The translations under genes were made by a program, and so were the position numbers. Below the pieces are notes generated by a model. It was not told where the DNA came from. It saw only the letters and a list, made by a program, of their open reading frames with translations, and did no database searches. Shown piece by piece: positions 8,236-40,230 of a DNA stretch of 64,000 nucleotides (the stretch's first letter is position 1; every line of letters begins with the position of its first letter). Origin of the DNA: Bispira polyomma (Eukaryota); the NCBI GenBank assembly GCA_965649765.1, contig OZ287750.1, forward strand, positions 27,714,001 to 27,778,000, written 5' to 3'.

Positions 8236-11200
8236 TATATATATATATCTCCCCCTCTCTTGGTTAAAGTGAAATCCTTCTACATAAGATTATGTGGCTA
8301 TTGAAATATTTGCAGTGCATTTAAAGGCGGGTGATAATTATTTCACATGGTGGTTATGTATACATATAGTGGGTGAAGAACATTTAGAATGTATTTTGAA
8401 AGTCAGACTTTGTCAGATTCACACTAAGCTTTATAATATATATATCATATATATATAATCAACGCCATGATGACGTCATAGTGGGAACTATTTCCCCCTT
8501 GCTTATTAAATGTAACTATTGCTTTTCTTTATTAAGTAGATTAAATTATCTCTAGTGACAGTTGTATATAAAATGAATGTTTGAGATGACTTTCTATATA
8601 TGTGTGTATACAGGATGGAAATGGCATCCAATATGTAGTGGTTTACTATTTTAGTTTGAATCTGTGATAAGTGTGATCTGTTTCCCACAATCTCTATATA
8701 AGAAATAGTGTTAATAATAATAACTATCACTTGATATAGCGCAGTTATAAACATCATTGTTATCTAATGCACTTTAACATTATGAATCTTTTTTCTGTCA
8801 TAATGTTTTTGTGTAATTATTTGTTCCTACAATATTTATGAGAAATTGTGTTCATACCCTCTCAAATTCCACAGTTGTAAGAACAAAAAATATGTAAAAT
8901 AAATGTTTCTAATTTGTTTTTCCTTTTCTGTATGTGTTTGTAGGACCGGCGTGACTTGGTGGGTCACCCCGGAGGCCTGGACCAGCTGAGTACTAGTGGT
9001 GCCCCCACATCATTCAGCAACACCCACCGCCTCCGCCATACCCCAACCACCGACTTCCAGCCACCTTACTTTCCACCACCATACACGGTCCCCCAGCAAA
9101 CCGTGGACTTCACCCACCATCACGTCAACCCGGACCCTTACGCTCACCTCAACCACTACAACACCCCACACCACCAGCAGTATGTCAACCACACAGACAG
9201 ACATCACCTTCTGGGGAATGACCCACTCAACTCCATACAGAGGGGATTCCCCAACCCATACGACACTCGGGCACGGGACTACGAAACCGCGGTCAGCAGA
9301 CCCGATCTCTTGATGCCACCCCGTGGGCCACACGACTTACACAACCCCTCCTTATTGGGACTGAGTTCCACCACAGGACTACCAAATATGGAGGCAGAGG
9401 TAAGTGGCTATTTACAGCAGAAGTGTTCTAGTTTCTGCATATATGTCACCAACATCTATCAAGATTATACCGTGTCGATACAAAACAACAAAAAGTGTTA
9501 TTATTTTTTAGTTCATGTAACTCACACAGATAATAATAATAAGGATTTCGTCAATGTAGTGTAAAATAACAAGGGGTAAACTCTATCCAATTGACTATGC
9601 TGTATGTGTACTTTTATTACATGCTGTGCACCAACATAGTTATTGTATTTATGAAAAAAGACAATATCTATCCTGTATCTGGATTTTGATCCATACATAA
9701 AATAAGTGACCACATTCTTTCATCACAAGCTATTATGTGTCATATTCTTAATGGTGCTGATTCCAGTTCAGTGCCTTCTCCTCAATTAAAACTACTAGTT
9801 TCAAAGACACAGAATGGCTATTATTGTCCAACCTTATAACTACTTATTGATCTGCAGTGTGTACTTACAAACACAGGAAGTACTGGTTGTTCAAATATTA
9901 TCCATTATAGTTAGCCTTGCTCAGGTTCAGTTGTCTCATTTAGGCTTAATATAATAAAATGTAACAAATCTTGATGGTAATATGAAACAAAATCAGTTGG
10001 GCAACAAAGTCCAAAAAAATGTGGAACGTATATGATATTTTAAGCATCTAGTATCATCATATATATATATATATTAATACACAGTGACTCTTTTAGTATT
10101 TGCGAGGAGTATTTCCCTGTCCTTAAATCAAGTTACTTTGTGAACAACCAAAGACTGAACAAGGTCAATAATTTACACAGTATCAACCTCAGTCAATCTC
10201 CTACAACACCAACCAATATAACTACACAGCTAAAAGTAAGCCAGAGTGCTCCCCCCCCCTCTCACCCTACCCCCTCACCCTCTGTAATTCCCATAGCCAA
10301 GAACTGCACATAAAAATGAATTAGGATATAAAATCTAGTTTTTGATTTAACTAGAGACAAATAGTTCTGAAGATAAAAATCAAATCTTGTCCTCCTATTC
10401 ATTAGCTGGCTTAACAAAAAATCCATGACCCATCCCCCTCTCTCTTCTTCTCTCACAGATTTTTCTCTCTGTCTCTTTATCACCAACCAACACCCAACCA
10501 AACAGCTTATCAATAATTCAAAACCCCAACTTGTGGGACACCAATTCTCTGCTGCAATCTACTAGCCAATTATTCGATGACAGATAGGAAACGTAGTGTT
10601 CTTATCAATCATTTTTTAATATTTCGCCAGGACCTCCCACTAGTAATGGATCCATTGGATTCTTATCTATGAGGAGGTGATATAGGAGGGAGGGACAACC
10701 AGAGTATATAAGCATGTGGACAGAGGTGTGTAGGAGTTTTTAATACCATTGTTTACATACCATTTTCTTGAAAGAATCTTTACATATCAGATGGTACAGA
10801 CTTGGTGAACGTTTCCATGCAGGCAACTTTCTGAGGCGACCAGCCGACGTATAACAGGCAATTTTTAATTGTTATGTTTCTATACAATATTTGAGAAAAA
10901 TCGATACCTGTATTTAAACCTGAATATCTCAGCCATTTCTCAACCGATTTTGATGCAACAAAAAGCACAATATACCCGATAAAATAAGCTTTCTCACCAT
11001 ATTTTTTATTAAATTTATACCTTCAGTAATTTTTGAGTTATTTACCGAAAAAGTCGCCTAGCATTGCCTGTCGCCTATCGGCGTTGCTCACATGGAAACA
11101 CTTTGTTATAAATCAATGAAACTGATCGAATCGCCGTCGGCCGTCGCCTGATCGCCTCAAAAAGTTGCCTGCATGGAAACGCTCACACCAAGTGTTTCCA

Positions 11201-32200: not shown

Positions 32201-35200
32201 TCTGTCTTGTTTTACTATTACATAAACCTTCTTCTTTCTTCTTTCCACTACTGCCTAATATTGGGACCCCCCTTGTTGGTTAAAATGGACCAGGCACGAG
32301 GCTTATACCATACCATAAACAAACTGGCCGGCCCAGGATGGCACAGGTCTGCTCTATCACTGGGCCATCATCGGAACCTTCTTCCCTCTTCTTCATGTTC
32401 TTCTGACAACAACAAAGTTCATAGAAAACACACAGACACAAAAAATATACAAATAATGGACAGGGATGGAGGTCTCTCTCCCTTTGATGTGGTGATGTAA
32501 ACTGTACTAATACACAGTAGGTGGGAGGGGGGGAGCCATAGCTACTCAATGTGATGTGTTATATGTACTGCTAATTGAGATATTTGGTAGAAGAGTGGCT
32601 CTTACTAGGCTCAATTATCATCATCTTCCTTTTATTAGCAGTTTCTTTCTAGGTACCCCCACCCCTCCCATCTCACTTCTCTTATTTGACTGACACATGG
32701 TTAGAAAGAGTTACAGCAGAGACCCTTTTTGGCTCTCTAATTACTAGTTGCAGCAGGTAACAGAAAGGAAAAGTCTCTTCTTCCCTTGCCCCCATTTTTT
32801 TATGTTGTTGCTTGTGGTCTTGTGTTCTGTGTGCTGCAATAGGAGATGGTTTCTTTACCACAACAAGACTATCAGAACACTCATAGAAATCTAGCAAATG
32901 AAAGAGAGAGTAGATACTAATGTAGAACTAATACATCTGTAGGTGTGTCTTTAAGGGCCCCCCCCCCCCCCAATTCTCTATCTTTCTGTTACTCCTCCCC
33001 TTAAAATGCTGCTGTTAAAATGTAGGGTGCCCCTCCCACAAATACACCCACATCTCTATGTAGGTACCCTCCTCACCCACCCCCCCACCCCCTTATTTCT
33101 TCCATATAACACACACGCAAGGCAGGAGGCTAAGTTGGGGGTAAAAAGTCGTGTTTGATGTGGCTTACACTTACCTCTGCTTGAATGGAGCTTCTGTTTG
33201 GAAACTGTTTCTGTTCTAGTGTCCCTGTCTCCTCCCTAACATTGGCTGCCCATCTGTTAAAGTCTTTAGTTGACATGATGCTCCCTCTAGGCTAACTGTG
33301 TGTCTGGGTGAGCCTTGGGCACTTATTTATACACATCTCACTTAAACTCCAATAGTTTTGGTCCAACCAGTAAGTCACCGTATCTCTACAATCCCTAATC
33401 CTAAGGATACAGTGGCACAATGTTCAAATATCCCATAGGCTGATTCTACTCGAAAACGTGTAATCTCAGATTAATAATTAGATGAGCATTTTATCTCAGG
33501 AAATACACTCAAGTTTGGTTTAAACTTAAGTTTAAGGGAAGAAATCACAAACAAATCTGATAGTCCTTTAACCCCTCCCTTCCCTCTACCCCATTCGGCG
33601 CGCGCCCCTGTCATCTTGGTCAGACCCTTTTACCAGCAGCCGAAACTTGACACCTGAAAGTTTGTCAGTCAAATTAAAAGTCTGAGTCAATCATTTGATT
33701 CTAACGACATTAAGTAATTCATCAGACTGGGGCTATTAGTCAGCCCACAATAGAGTTACAAGTTTAGTATTTACTGTTCGTGTACTGTGAATGGTTCTGT
33801 GAGGGTTTGACTTTAATGCATTATGACCGATCATTTCATAACACTGAAGACACCAGCTCACACATTCAAAATTTTCAGGTCATTATTATTATTTTTGTAA
33901 GCAGAAGTTCCAGAAGGTATTTCCAGATGGTTTTGCATTTTGTGTGTAGTAGTTTTTGTATCACCATCCTATGCTATATGTAGATATTCTATATATTTAC
34001 CCTGGTTTTAGAGCCAAATCTAAAAACGGGGGCAGGTTCCTAAGAGAGAAGTTAGACAAAATGGGCATGAACCTCCCGGCTGGCAGGCGCAAAGCCGCGG
34101 CCGTGACCTTGCTCACGTCACTAGTCGAAGGTAAATATACGTTACCCTTAAACAGTGTTGTTAATGGTGTTGTCTTTTTTGTTTGACTCCATTGTAGGGC
34201 TAAATCTAAGAATGGTGGACGGGCGCTCAGAGAAAAGTTGGACAAAATAGGGTTGAGTCTTCCTGCCGGGAGGCGGAAGGCCGCCACGGTGACCTTGCTG
34301 ACGTCACTGGCGGAAGGTGAGGGTCAAATATTAGCGGCCTGTGCCCGTTAAGTTTTATATTTCATTTTTTTACATCTGTATACCCCTGGACACGTCTAGA
34401 ATTGGAGCTAAAAATGCCTTGTTATTACAATTAGTCTTATATAATAAAAGCCTATGTATAATGTGATCAATCGATTCCTTCAATGGACTTAAAATTACAC
34501 ACGACACAATCAGAGATTGAAATAGGCTAAAGTACACTGTACTGACATAGTTATTGATCTATTTATGCATAAAAAAGTATGGAAACTTCATTGATTGCCC
34601 CTTCCCCTTGTTTCTTGTTATGCTATGTAGCATTTATCTGATGGATAATTTGGGATGTATTATATTTATACGGGACACGTTTTTGATGTAAAAAAAAAAC
34701 AAATCATCAACGACATTTGAAAAATTGTAAAAAAATAGACCAACACATATCTCAATAATTTTTTCTCTCAAAAGGGCACATACACAGGAAGTGATACTTT
34801 GTCTTTTGGGATAAGGGAAGGTTCAGAGAACCCCATGTTTAGTAATAAATCCTAATTTGATGAAATTAATCAAATAATCATAATAAGATACCAAAACTTT
34901 CATCTTTTTTGTGCTATTAAAAAGACAATTCATAACATTATCCTTGGATTTCCCTCTGATCACTTATTTCAAGTTATTTCTGCTTAAATGAGAAGAATAA
35001 CACTTCAGTAGGAGATTGTATTAGGATTACATGAACTTATTTAATAGCTAATTGGAGGCACAGATGGCATTAAGAAGCTCCTGTAAATCACGCCCCAAGC
35101 TGGAAATAACTGACCTATTAAACCTCCCGACTATCTGTCAATTAAGCAAGAAAAATTGTGGGATTTTGTTTTTTCCTTCTTATGGCAACCCCCTGGGGAA

Positions 35201-38200
35201 TCCCCACAGAGGGCTCAGTTCAAGAGTGGGTGTAGGGCCAATAAGGATAGAATTCAATGTGCCCCTGGAGTGGTTAGGGGAGGGTCAATCTCCACAGAGA
35301 AGGGGGGTCACCTTTTATCAGTGGGGTGGGGATAGAGGAGGCAAACCTTGGAGACATCTACATCCACTTTTATTACAGAGAGAACCCCACAAGAATGAAT
35401 TGCTTTTTTATGTGTCTNNNNNNNNNNNNNNNNNNNNNNNNNNNNNNNNNNNNNNNNNNNNNNNNNNNNNNNNNNNNNNNNNNNNNNNNNNNNNNNNNNN
35501 NNNNNNNNNNNNNNNNNNNNNNNNNNNNNNNNNNNNNNNNNNNNNNNNNNNNNNNNNNNNNNNNNNNNNNNNNNNNNNNAAAAACAGACTGTACACAAAA
35601 CTGGTCATTACCCTTGTTGTGTGAAAAAAAAATTGAAGAAAAAATCCTATTCGCCAAAGAAATGTAAGGAAGTAACTTGTGACCAATTATTTTAATAGAG
35701 CTTTCAGTGCTGAATTCAAATTTGCAATCAAATATTATATATCTTTACTACAGCCAGATAGACCTTATTTTTAAGCTTTAGTTTGAGCTCAATTTAAGAT
35801 TTCCTGAGAATTTTGGTCCACAGATAAAGTTTATTTTATTAACCTTTTTTTCTACCGAAAGTGACAGATCCCCACCACTCTTATTGACACCATTCTTTTT
35901 GACCAAACTTCCAGTTAGTTGTATATGTCACCGCGTTGTGTTGACAATTTTCTTGTCAAAAGGCCATTTGTACAAATGAGCTCAAGCAGAAACGTGATTA
36001 TTTGTAACAAACACCCTAATCACAGCCATTTTCAGATCACCTGAAAATTAGAGCAATTTCACCTTTTCTTCTCTTGGAAATGTTGGAATTCTCTTTTTAA
36101 AAAAGATTCTACAGTTCTAAATTAAGCCAAATTATACCCCTCTTTTGTATGGACGTTTTTTGTCCTGTCTACAAAGATAATTTGAAAAAAGGTAAATATT
36201 TATTTTAGAAAAAAAAGAGAGGGAAATATGACTGTGGCCAATCTTTAGTACTGTAATTATACAAAAATTGAATTACCACTTTCTTAGTTTATCTAAAGTT
36301 ATATTCTTTGATGTTTAAGCCTTCAATGTTTACATAATGGATCTGAATTATCTTTAGTAAATAATTAGCCAGATTACACTTCAAGTCCTCAAACTGGCTT
36401 CTTGGTGGTTTTATAAAACGTCAAGATTGTTTGATTTATCCTACTTATTTATAAAAAAATAAATCGTATTTGCCAGTAAACAATTGACGTTTATATTTGT
36501 TTTGTTTTTTTCGTATTTGAAATTCGTTCTTCAAAAAAGAACTACTTAGTTTATATTTTATTCACATTAGAAAAAACCCATAATAGTTTATAAAAGTTGG
36601 TACTCTATATTTGATCAAACTATAAATATGCAAAGTTAATATTTATCATTAACAAGAGTTTACCTGTATATTGCATGTTGTGTCTTCATGTTCTGGGCAT
36701 GCTTTATCATATGTGTATGTGGAAGACAAATAATATATATTTTGATACATCATTATTATTTAACTGTGTTTGGTCTAATCTAATCTAGTCGTACTTTTAT
36801 AGCGCTTAATCTTGTACAACAAATTCTAAGGCGCAACAAACCCAAAACGTTAATCGAAAATCAAAAATAGTGGCCGGATGGAAATCTTAACCAGGGAGAC
36901 TACCGTAAATGGTTGCGACGGCTAAAGTGGAAAAGCCTGTTCAAAAAGATAGGCCTTCAGCTTACTCCTGAAAGAGGAGAAAGTTTGAGCCAGGCGAACA
37001 TGATCAGGTAGGCTGTTCCAAATGAGGGGGCCATCATGAGCTAGGCAGTGATTGAACTGAACTTTGGATTTGTGGATGCGAGGGTCGAAAGTGGGAATGT
37101 TAAGGTACAATTTATCAGGGTTACTGCGCCTTGTCCTGACTGAGCATGTATATTTGGATAGATGGGGGCTAAAATAAGTGGGTAATCCAGAATTTAGAAA
37201 TTTATATATTATTGTTGCTGTTTTGAAAGCAACACAATATTTTATTGGGAGCCAGTGCAGTGACTTGAGTACAGGAGTAATATGGGAAAATTTAGAAGTT
37301 ATGGCCACAATACGTGCCAATGAGTGTTGGATATTCTGAAGGCATCTGAGATCATTACGAGATAAGGAACGGAACAGAGAGTTGCAGTAATCAAGCCTGC
37401 TGCCGACGAAAGCATTGGCAACAGTGATTGCCGTGGATTTGGAAAGATAGCGTCGAATCCGCCTGAAATCACGGAGGCCAACAAAACATGATCTACACAC
37501 CGATGCGACATGGTTAGAGAAGGAGAATTCAGAGTCGAACACCACACCCAGGTTTCGTACTTTGTCAGCTGGAAAAAACCTGCTGCCAAGAATGTCAAGT
37601 GGAAAACAGCTGGACAATTTTTCCCGTTGCGACTTGGAGCCAAACAAAATAAACTCAGTCTTCTCAGGGTTCAGCTTGAGTTTATTTGCTGCCATCCAGT
37701 GTTGTACATCAACAAGGCAGTTCTGTAAGGAAGTGAAAGCTGCCTGGGCAGAGTCAGGTGTAAGGTGGATGTACAGTTGGGTATCATCAGCATAGAAGTG
37801 AAAGTTTATGTTTTTGTTTTTGTCAAGCAGTTAGAAGGTTGTTAGAACATTCAGATAAAGACTAATTTTATTGTCACCATTTTGTGTTTGGTTTAGGACA
37901 GTTAGTCATAACAGCCAGATATATTTAATTATACTGTTCTATCTTGTGTTTGGCCTAAGACAGGTAGTTATCATGACTTCATATGTTTATCTATATATCA
38001 TTTCCTGTGTTTGGTCTAAATGACAGTTAAAGTGGCCAGCTATTTTTAAGTATACTGCTGTTGTATTTTGTGTTTGGTCTAGGTGAGGGAATCAGAATGG
38101 CAAGATATATTGAGGGAATCAGAATGGCAAGATATATTTAACAATACTGTTTTTTTTTTGTGTTTGGTCCAGGTGAAGCAGTCAGAATGGCCAGAGACTT

Positions 38201-39814
38201 CGGTTACCTCTGTGAGACAGAGTTTCCTTCCCGTCAATGTGCGGAGTACAACACCAGACAACACTGCGACCCTGCGGATGTCACCCACAGGAAACAAGCC
38301 ATCATAGCATCCAAGTAAGCAAAGGCTTCTAGCACTTTCTCATCTACCTTAATCCAAGGGTGGGGTATACTCTTTTGGTTACTGATTTCATTGCATCAAC
38401 ATTTCATAAAAGTTACCTGATTATGAAATAAAGGGATGCATTTTCTTGCTGTTCTTTGATTTATTAAAATGCTCACTGCTTTTGGTAAGCTACATTTGAA
38501 GCCATGATTTTACATGAAATAAGCACTGAAAGATGGTTGATGACGAAATCCATAGCTATAAATTTGGTATTCTTTTCCAATGATTATTATATAACATTTT
38601 AAAATAGCTCAGAAACTAAATTGACAAAATAAATAAAAATAATTTGTTATCTAATTATAAAATATACTCCAGTTCATATATAAAAAAAAAGAGATAATAG
38701 CACTGTTGTGGTCTATTGATAGATCATTCAAAGACCCAGTAGTGTTCACTGAGCAATTAAGTACCTTCAGTGGCTCCCCCATTCAAAATATAACCTCTCC
38801 ACCTTAGCTATTGACACAGTGAGATACAATATCCGCCAAACATTGGATTTCAAACAAGCCATACCAACCAGGGACTAGTACTGCCCCTTCTACTACTTAA
38901 AGCTAGAGCAGGTCCCTGAGTAAAGATCAAACAGGAGGAGCCATTAATTAAATAAAGCCATGAACTCAAACCAACCCTCACCAACATCCCCCTTCCTCCC
39001 TATGTAACCCTCTATATCCAGTATATGTATTCATATAAGTACATACATATATCTGACCCTCTTCTCTCTCACTGATCACACCTTCATATGGGTTTTTAAC
39101 ATATTGTATAGTTTTTTAAGTCTCCAGTCATTTTCTCTAAAGTATAAAATATCCCATGAAAATGTCAAAGCCGAAGAGTCCTATTCCCCCCCCTCCCCAC
39201 CCCACCCCCAACCCATCTATAAACTATTATCAGTATTGTTGTCCTGGTGGAGATTAAGAGTACCCTAATTGAGGAGAAAACCCCCTAGTAAAAAGGTTCT
39301 TGAATCTGTGCAAACTTGCACTACCATTTGGTACGAGGACCCTGTGTTTGCCCAAGCCCACTTAATCAATGTGCAGTAGCTCACTAAAATAGCCAATATA
39401 AGGAAGGGTACACACAAAAACCTTGAAATCCTAGCAGGAATTTGTCACATTTCCCTCATATTTTAGCAAGGGAATTAAAGGCGACCAGTGTCTTCTTCCT
39501 TTTTTTCAAGAGATTTTAGCCAGCATACATTTCTTTTTTTCTTGAAGCTGTTGTCAGTGTTTGATTGAAATGTCACTTACTTAGATAAACTTTAAAGAAG
39601 ACATACTAGTCACTAGCAGTAGTATATGAAGATCTTCATTGATTGCAAAATGATACAAATTTCCTGTCTCAGGAGTGTCACCCATATTTATAACACATGA
39701 GTATAGTATACACACATGCCAGGGATAATATTTCCTCTCTGTCTCTATAAATATATATATATTCTTATATAAATAAAATAATTATTTAAACCCCCTATTA
39801 TCTCAACCATGTTC

Positions 39815-39890
<76 letters not shown>

Positions 39891-40230
39891 CTTCTCTGTA
39901 TCTTCCAGAAATATCCTCAAAGAACTCATAGACTTGCTAAACCAGGATAGATCCCCTCTGGGGAACACCAGGCCCCAGCCCATTCTGGACACCAACATAC
40001 AGAGACATTTGACCCACTTTTCTCTCATTTCCCACGGATTCGGTTCCCCTGCCATCGTGGCCTCCATGACAGCAGTTCAGAACTATTTGACGGAGATGCT
40101 CAAACTACTGGATAAGAACTACCCCAACTCTCAGCCCTCACAAACTGGCAACTCTCTTACCAATAACAACTCCTCAGTAGACACTGGCACAAAGACTAGC
40201 AAAGATATCAAGGACGAGAACAGGAAGTGA
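4939..40230 (+). CDS. TFAP2: Transcription factor AP-2, whole gene model: join(4939..5277,8944..9399,24098..24149,25760..25958,[34012..34130 or 34198..34316],38173..38314,39909..40230), 542 aa
   Basis: All introns are GT-AG with compatible phases (0,0,1,2,1,2); the total is 1629 nt. AP-2 hallmarks: [89 protein letters not shown]. Confidence 0.95.
8199..8248. repeat. (TA)n microsatellite
   Basis: Direct reading. Confidence 0.9.
8944..9399 (+). CDS. TFAP2: AP-2 exon 2, Pro/His/Gln-rich activation region with PY motif
   Basis: tgtag|GAC CGG CGT GAC ... [16 protein letters not shown] ... GAG|GTAAGT. Confidence 0.95.
10805..11543. mobile_element. Foldback MITE with ~300-bp inverted arms (PIF/Harbinger-like termini), AP-2 intron 2
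   Basis: GTGAACGTTTCCATGCAGGCAACTTTCTGAGGCGACCAGCCGACGTATAACAGGCAATTTTTAATT at the left end is nearly the exact reverse complement of the right end. Superfamily tentative; TSD not clean. Confidence 0.85.
24098..24149 (+). CDS. TFAP2: AP-2 exon 3 (52 nt, [17 protein letters not shown])
   Basis: tttacag|ACT ... CGA G|GTTAGT. Resembles vertebrate DQ(T/S)VIKK and supplies the phase 0 to 1 change needed for exon 4. Not in the ORF track. Confidence 0.85.
25760..25958 (+). CDS. TFAP2: AP-2 exon 4, start of DNA-binding domain
   Basis: tttcag|GC ATG CGG ... [46 protein letters not shown] ... AG|GTAGGT. Confidence 0.96.
34012..34130 (+). CDS. TFAP2: AP-2 exon 5a (basic region, copy A): (R)[39 protein letters not shown](G)
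   Basis: ttttag|A GCC AAA ... GAA G|GTAAAT, 119 nt, phase 2 in and phase 1 out. Confidence 0.93.
34198..34316 (+). CDS. TFAP2: AP-2 exon 5b (basic region, copy B): (R)[39 protein letters not shown](G)
   Basis: ttgtag|G GCT AAA ... GAA G|GTGAGG, 119 nt, same phases as 5a, no stops. Confidence 0.92.
35418..35579. other. Assembly gap (N run) in AP-2 intron 5
   Basis: 162 consecutive N. Confidence 0.99.
36775..37820 (-). mobile_element. 5'-truncated L2/Crack-type (CR1 group) LINE, RT C-terminal half plus 3' tail
   Basis: [10 protein letters not shown] near 37775-37800; ORF 36922..37695 with [27 protein letters not shown]; tail ending in GATTA repeats. Confidence 0.93.
37883..38195 (+). repeat. 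Degenerate ~62-bp tandem repeat containing the exon-6 acceptor
   Basis: TGTGTTTGG anchor at 37883, 37945, 38006, 38069, 38159 (spacing 62, 61, 63, 63+27). Confidence 0.85.
38173..38314 (+). CDS. TFAP2: AP-2 exon 6, helix-span-helix: [48 protein letters not shown]
   Basis: gtccag|GT GAA GCA ... TCC AA|GTAAGC; matches vertebrate GEAVHLARDFGYVCETEFP. Confidence 0.95.
39819..39886. repeat. (TA)34 microsatellite
   Basis: Direct reading; ends 22 nt before the last AP-2 exon. Confidence 0.95.
39909..40230 (+). CDS. TFAP2: AP-2 last coding exon, dimerisation helix and C-terminus
   Basis: ttccag|A AAT ATC CTC ... [14 protein letters not shown]...[15 protein letters not shown]...QNYLTE...KDENRK TGA. 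Confidence 0.96.

What the first reader, a model, noticed from the sequence alone, without database searches (positions are those of the whole stretch)
34012..34316. Tandem duplicated, mutually exclusive exons swap the AP-2 DNA-binding basic region
Seen in sequence: two 119-nt exons (34012-34130, 34198-34316) with identical phases, intact AG/GT sites and no stops. Of 39 codons, 33 encode the same residue and 19 of those differ synonymously; only 6 amino acids differ (F/A, M/I, M/L, N/S, A/T, V/A). Because 119 is not a multiple of 3, including both exons or skipping both shifts the frame. The spacer intron is only 67 nt, so any branch point lies within ~55 nt of the 5a donor. Established: this segment ([13 protein letters not shown]) is part of the DNA-binding domain, is a single exon in vertebrate TFAP2 genes, and short donor-to-branch distance is a known mechanism of mutually exclusive splicing. 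Inference: an old duplication with both copies under purifying selection, letting one gene make two DNA-binding variants and AA/AB/BB dimers, a splicing-based analogue of the vertebrate paralogue expansion. I cannot say whether this has been described in this lineage.
Basis: partly seen in the sequence, partly recalled or inferred. Interest (0 to 1): 0.92.

Follow-up and report, generated by a model that had tools for sequence, protein, structure and literature searches.

The report
Either-or exon in worm AP-2 gene
A marine worm's only AP-2 gene-regulator gene carries two old, well-kept copies of one exon of its DNA-binding part and very probably uses one or the other in each message; other worms and a lamp shell do the same, but the amino acids that read the DNA are identical in both versions, so this looks like fine-tuning rather than a change of target genes.

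Summary
Observation confirmed exactly: two 119-nt copies of AP-2 exon 5, same phase, 67-nt spacer, 19 synonymous and 6 replacement codons, in the genome's only AP-2 gene (an annelid by tree). Not an assembly artefact. A related species has orthologues of both copies (24 synonymous, 2 replacement changes). Tandem pairs occur in nine other animals: eight with 44-65-nt spacers, and the brachiopod Lingula, whose RefSeq isoforms X1/X2 differ only in this exon. Molluscs, Paralvinella, clitellate-like and arthropod-like loci have one copy. Exclusivity is best explained by a branch point only 33-34 nt from the 5A donor (other introns here are at least about 280 nt), backed by frameshift/NMD. An RNA-structure switch (an earlier scan note on this stretch) is not conserved. 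No RNA run exists for this species, so either-or use here is inferred. Every DNA-contacting residue of human TFAP2A in this exon is identical in both copies; the six changes hit positions variable across the family. So this is probably isoform tuning, not a FoxP-like specificity switch. I found no paper describing it; the scan had no AP-2 finding on other DNA. New member of a known kind.

The parts
8944..9561 (+). Open frame holding an N-terminal AP-2 exon (PPY activation motif); exact exon ends not fixed
   Evidence: 72% to annelid-like transcript protein P0446
25760..25958 (+). Constitutive exon 4: first part of the DNA-binding domain (Loop1 with S222, S247, R254 equivalents); ends in phase 2
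33617..33723 (.). Conserved non-coding element upstream of 5A (80% to L019)
34012..34130 (+). Exon 5A, derived copy (F264, M272, M274, N275, A285, V293 in human TFAP2A numbering)
34131..34197 (+). 67-nt spacer intron, GT...AG; in-frame stop at 34184 if retained
34155..34173 (+). 19-nt block identical in L019, holding the only usable branch adenosines (34163-34164, YTRAY match) in UG-rich sequence
34198..34316 (+). Exon 5B, annelid-typical copy (A264, I272, L274, S275, T285, A293)
34516..34537 (.). Short conserved non-coding element 200 nt after 5B (21/22 to L019); role unknown
35023..35145 (.). Conserved non-coding element downstream of 5B (86% to L019)
38173..38314 (+). Constitutive exon 6: start of the helix-span-helix dimerisation domain
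39909..40230 (+). Last coding exon (rest of helix-span-helix, stop at 40228)

Best explanation
5A and 5B are homologous mutually exclusive exons of the single AP-2 (TFAP2) gene of an annelid. Shown: anatomy, frame logic, conservation of both copies. Inferred: the spliceosome cannot join 5A to 5B because the branch point of the 5B acceptor lies 33-34 nt from the 5A donor, so each mRNA takes one copy; rare double-inclusion, double-skip or retention products carry premature stops and should be removed by NMD. The two proteins (and, as AP-2 is an obligate dimer, AA/AB/BB dimers) should read the same GCC(N3)GGC motif and differ in helix-3 packing, the linker loop and the first dimerisation residue, i.e. 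in affinity, stability, modification or partners. T285 of 5B sits in a basic R-R-K-A-A-T context that resembles a basophilic kinase site and is Ala in 5A (speculative lead).
For: Same length, phase and intact sites; only single inclusion keeps the frame. Orthologous pair in a relative, L019/L020: 5A 11 synonymous/2 replacement, 5B 13/0; five of six A/B differences kept. Lingula RefSeq XP_013408010.1 and XP_013408011.1 (both 481 aa) differ only at 14 residues of this segment and map to two tandem exons in L122. A Logan transcript protein (P0446) carries an exon 36/39 like the second copy of L042, alone between exons 4 and 6. Spacers 44-67 nt in nine animals; the most distal usable adenosine is 23-43 nt from the donor in all, under the ~50-nt threshold cited in PMC7969005; 38 myosin introns in this genome are at least ~280 nt, median ~830. 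DNA-contact residues identical; the six sites vary among single-copy AP-2s.
Against: No RNA run holds this stretch, so neither copy is shown spliced in this species. The branch point is predicted, not mapped; introns of 40-60 nt are spliced in small-intron animals (PMC4165533 gives ~40 nt minimum in C. elegans). Lingula keeps exclusivity with a 690-nt spacer, so steric hindrance is not required everywhere. Three of the short-spacer loci were found as read-through ORFs, which favours short spacers. RefSeq isoforms are automated models.
Confidence: 0.82

Rival explanations
1. Mutually exclusive exons that switch DNA-binding specificity, as in FoxP/FOXP1, giving two target-gene sets.
For: Exon lies in the DNA-binding region; copy-specific residues conserved between species; position 264 neighbours backbone-binding R263/R266 and 285 neighbours K282 (PMC10450164).
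Against: K257 (base reader) and all other contact residues in the exon identical; S222 and S247 lie in the shared exon 4; changed sites take the same residues in single-copy AP-2s of other animals.
Confidence: 0.12
2. Only one copy is used productively; the other is a regulated 'poison' or near-silent exon kept for splicing control or NMD autoregulation.
For: Double inclusion gives a premature stop; no RNA evidence here.
Against: Both copies show amino-acid-level constraint across species (24 synonymous vs 2 replacement codons), which a non-translated exon would not; both versions are annotated as proteins in Lingula.
Confidence: 0.05
3. Exclusivity or choice is set by competing RNA secondary structures (Dscam-like), as an earlier scan note proposed.
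For: The window region folds at z about -3.4, with a helix between 34025-34043 and 34331-34349 and a 10-bp match between the 5A acceptor region and 5A donor.
Against: No such signal in the relative L019 (z 0.17) or in seven other tandem loci (z 0.1 to 1.8); no strong helix keeps pairing with compensatory changes.
Confidence: 0.08
4. Assembly artefact or recent neutral duplication.
For: None beyond the tandem layout.
Against: Short-read contigs span both copies; dS above 1.5 between copies; same pair in a relative.
Confidence: 0.01

Closest known systems
FoxP / FOXP1 alternative forkhead exons (PMC3002244)
   Same: Single-copy invertebrate transcription-factor gene; tandem-duplicated exon for the C-terminal part of the DNA-binding domain; two isoforms; paralogues or lineages that keep only one exon.
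   Different: FoxP isoforms differ in base-contacting residues; here they are identical. FoxP exons are bilaterian-wide; the AP-2 pair is patchy (some annelid-like lineages, Lingula).
Lingula anatina AP-2 RefSeq isoforms X1/X2 (XP_013408010.1, XP_013408011.1)
   Same: Same gene, same 119-nt exon duplicated and used one at a time; one copy has hydrophobic 264, M272, M274, A285 like 5A.
   Different: 690-nt spacer, 14 differences rather than 6, and the M-type copy is second, not first; automated annotation, no paper found.
Sterically enforced homologous MXEs (alpha-tropomyosin 2/3, OGDH 4a/4b; PMC7969005) and NMD-policed non-3n MXEs (PMC4165533)
   Same: Branch adenosine under ~50 nt from the upstream donor; spacer length held short; non-3n exons.
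   Different: There the branch point is distant from the acceptor in a longer intron and was mapped; here the whole intron is short and the branch point only predicted.
Vertebrate TFAP2A-E paralogues (PMC10450164)
   Same: Same fold and contact residues; 34/39 identity of 5A to TFAP2A.
   Different: Separate genes that differ over their whole length, including activation domains; the worm isoforms differ in six residues only.

Membership tests
AP-2/TFAP2 transcription factors | PF03299 basic DNA-binding domain followed by helix-span-helix | tested here: met
   exons cover profile positions 1-197 in order
AP-2/TFAP2 transcription factors | DNA-contact residues of TFAP2A conserved | tested here: met
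Homologous mutually exclusive exons | Adjacent homologous exons of equal length and phase with intact splice sites | tested here: met
Homologous mutually exclusive exons | Both copies under purifying selection | tested here: met
Homologous mutually exclusive exons | Each copy found alone in mRNA of this species | not testable with these tools
   no RNA run holds the stretch
Homologous mutually exclusive exons | Each copy found alone in products of a homologous pair elsewhere | tested here: met
   Lingula X1/X2 and L122; automated annotation
Sterically enforced MXEs | Branch point under ~50 nt from the upstream donor | tested here: inconclusive
   only usable adenosines at 33-34 nt (29 nt in L019); predicted, not mapped
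FoxP-type DNA-specificity switch | Alternative exons differ in base-contacting residues | tested here: not met
   all eight contact residues within the exon identical
Dscam-type RNA-structure MXEs | Conserved docking/selector pairings | tested here: not met

The most novel reading that the evidence does not exclude
The exon pair is an ancient lophotrochozoan AP-2 isoform switch (older than the annelid-brachiopod split, lost in molluscs and several annelid lines), or the same exon has been duplicated repeatedly and driven to the same alternative state (hydrophobic 264, M272/M274, A285), giving a regulated second AP-2 with distinct affinity, modification or partners in particular cell types.
Probability: 0.25. 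Interest if true: 0.7.

Novelty: new member of a known kind. Interest (0 to 1): 0.46.

Why it matters
AP-2 controls epidermis and neuron specification and is treated as a single-product gene in most invertebrates. A hidden either-or exon in its DNA-binding region, shared by several annelid-like lineages and a brachiopod, means expression and knock-down studies in these animals average over two proteins. It is a compact test of how six non-contact residues tune a transcription factor, and of whether the same exon duplicates once or repeatedly. The mechanism itself is textbook.

Tried and rejected
RNA evidence: one run search found only three DNA-type runs. RNA-structure switch: not conserved. 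Trees of the exon (119 nt or 39 aa) do not resolve one versus several origins; holding the M-type copies together is neither rejected nor shown (p-AU 0.73). AlphaFold model of the Lingula domain was low confidence (pLDDT 55) and not used. Owenia and Lingula X1 look-ups returned no locus; the P0272 locus came without DNA. The species of L010, L011, L013, L019, L021, L022, L024, L042 could not be named. Five paper searches found no description of AP-2 alternative exons. Two queries were under the length limit and resent as a 41-codon window reference or a natural alignment.

Full report
Observation. The two exons are as described: 34012-34130 (5A) and 34198-34316 (5B), 119 nt each, AG/GT flanks, 67-nt spacer, 14 identical, 19 synonymous and 6 replacement codons, dN about 0.09 and dS about 1.7. 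Both match PF03299 positions 46-84, between exon 4 (1-44) and exon 6 (86-130). This is the only AP-2 gene of the 1.04-Gb genome; four weak hits on another chromosome are 27-32% remote look-alikes. Short-read contigs cover both exons without a difference (one study, possibly the source sample). Either copy alone reads to the stop at 40228; both, neither or spacer retention stop 139-273 nt before the last junction.

Organism. A tree of exon 6 and 7 residues places the gene with Helobdella, Paralvinella and unnamed annelid-like sequences (90/89, not starred). An earlier scan note calls the animal a fan worm; I tested only the annelid placement.

Conservation. A marine-metagenome contig (L019, L020) holds orthologues of both copies: 5A 37/39 and 5B 39/39 residues, with 11+13 synonymous against 2+0 replacement codons; five of the six A/B differences are kept. 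Further tandem pairs: L010, L011/12, L013/14, L021, L022, L024, L042, with spacers of 61, 64, 58, 59, 59, 65 and 44 nt; L021's second copy has one extra base in a 2x-coverage contig. Three of these were found as read-through ORFs, which favours short spacers; L019 and L021 were not. Whole genes of Paralvinella and Mactra have one copy, as do 63 scan loci within the 0.1-1.5 kb held, and RefSeq isoforms of scallops, oysters, mussels, clams, abalones, snails, Lineus and barnacles show one version. The brachiopod Lingula anatina has RefSeq isoforms X1 and X2 that differ only at 14 residues of this segment, matching two tandem exons 690 nt apart. A transcript-derived annelid-like protein (P0446) carries an exon 36/39 like L042's second copy, alone. 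These are the best signs of either-or use; no RNA run of this species was found.

Mechanism of exclusivity. The spacer holds a 19-nt block identical in L019 (34155-34173; about 0.001 by the third-position yardstick, before allowing for search) with a YTRAY match. Its adenosines are the most distal usable ones: 33-34 nt from the 5A donor here, 28-29 nt in L019, 23-43 nt in all short-spacer loci. That is under the ~50-nt steric threshold cited in PMC7969005. Thirty-eight myosin introns in this genome are at least about 280 nt, median about 830 (hand-curated gaps), so 67 nt is exceptional. Steric blocking plus NMD of non-3n products (as in PMC4165533) is the inferred mechanism; the branch point is not mapped and Lingula shows that a short spacer is not required.

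What the swap changes. 5A aligns to TFAP2A residues 256-294 (8J0K; numbering from the construct range). In the TFAP2A-DNA structure (PMC10450164) bases are read by K257, S222 and S247, and the backbone by A256, S258, K259, N260, R263, R266, K282 and residues of exon 4. All those in this exon are identical in 5A and 5B. The changes fall at 264 and 272 (helix 3), 274, 275, 285 (linker) and 293 (first helix-span-helix residue). Positions 264, 274, 275 and 285 are among the most variable of the segment across 70 distinct peptides; 272 and 293 are more conserved but the same substitutions occur in single-copy genes. The likely effect is on affinity, stability, modification or partners, not motif (inference). 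That the differences are held between species says they matter. A285 recurs in one copy of four lineages with pairs (window/L019, L021, L042, Lingula) but in only one single-version protein (Schmidtea) among 50 distinct ones; the Thr it replaces sits in a basophilic-kinase-like context (my knowledge; untested).

Origin. Copy order differs (M-type first here, second in Lingula; both M-type in L021), and exon trees are unresolved. One ancient duplication with losses and turnover, and several independent ones, both remain open.

Comparison and verdict. It works like known homologous mutually exclusive exons in transcription factors, closest FoxP (PMC3002244), but fails the defining test of a specificity switch. 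No paper on AP-2 alternative exons of this kind was found; the Lingula case is in RefSeq as automated annotation. The genome has many such duplicated-exon pairs (myosin II; scan notes), which lowers surprise. New member of a known kind, interest 0.46.

Handling notes. Exons were placed side by side only inside local scripts for the frame check and the tree. The masked stretch 35418-35579 was left as it is; a third copy inside it cannot be excluded.

Noticed in passing
window 36774-37817 (- strand): 5'-truncated LINE-like insertion (reverse-transcriptase YADD motif at its cut end, short tandem tail), very high copy in reads, in intron 5B-6.
   Followed up: partly
window 37945-38172: Three degenerate copies of the exon-6 acceptor unit (37945, 38006, 38069) before the real one; the nearest ends in AG about 90 nt upstream and is followed by a 27-nt tandem repeat, a possible decoy acceptor.
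   Followed up: partly
window 33617-33723, 34516-34537, 35023-35145: Non-coding elements conserved in the relative L019; enhancers or splicing regulators.
   Followed up: partly
G000:C9 25.57 Mb and 61.51 Mb (L006-L009): Two inverted pairs of intron-less, very divergent AP-2-domain-like segments (27-32% to Owenia AP-2); identity unresolved.
   Followed up: partly
G000:C6 37887-37907 kb (L106-L107): Muscle-type myosin II gene with several clusters of duplicated exons (two P-loop exons, three switch-I exons, others), spacers 450-1430 nt.
   Followed up: no
G000:C11 4.17-4.19 Mb, C8 1.22-1.24 Mb, C13 27.29-27.31 Mb: Three apparently near-identical myosin gene copies on different chromosomes (same scores and exon spacing).
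   Followed up: no
L017:6021-6139: An annelid-like gene with a single exon of the 5B type (A293 and the same 8-nt donor), possibly a lineage that lost 5A.
   Followed up: no
P0490, P0255, P0227: Clams and oysters have a second, divergent AP-2 gene instead of a second exon.
   Followed up: no
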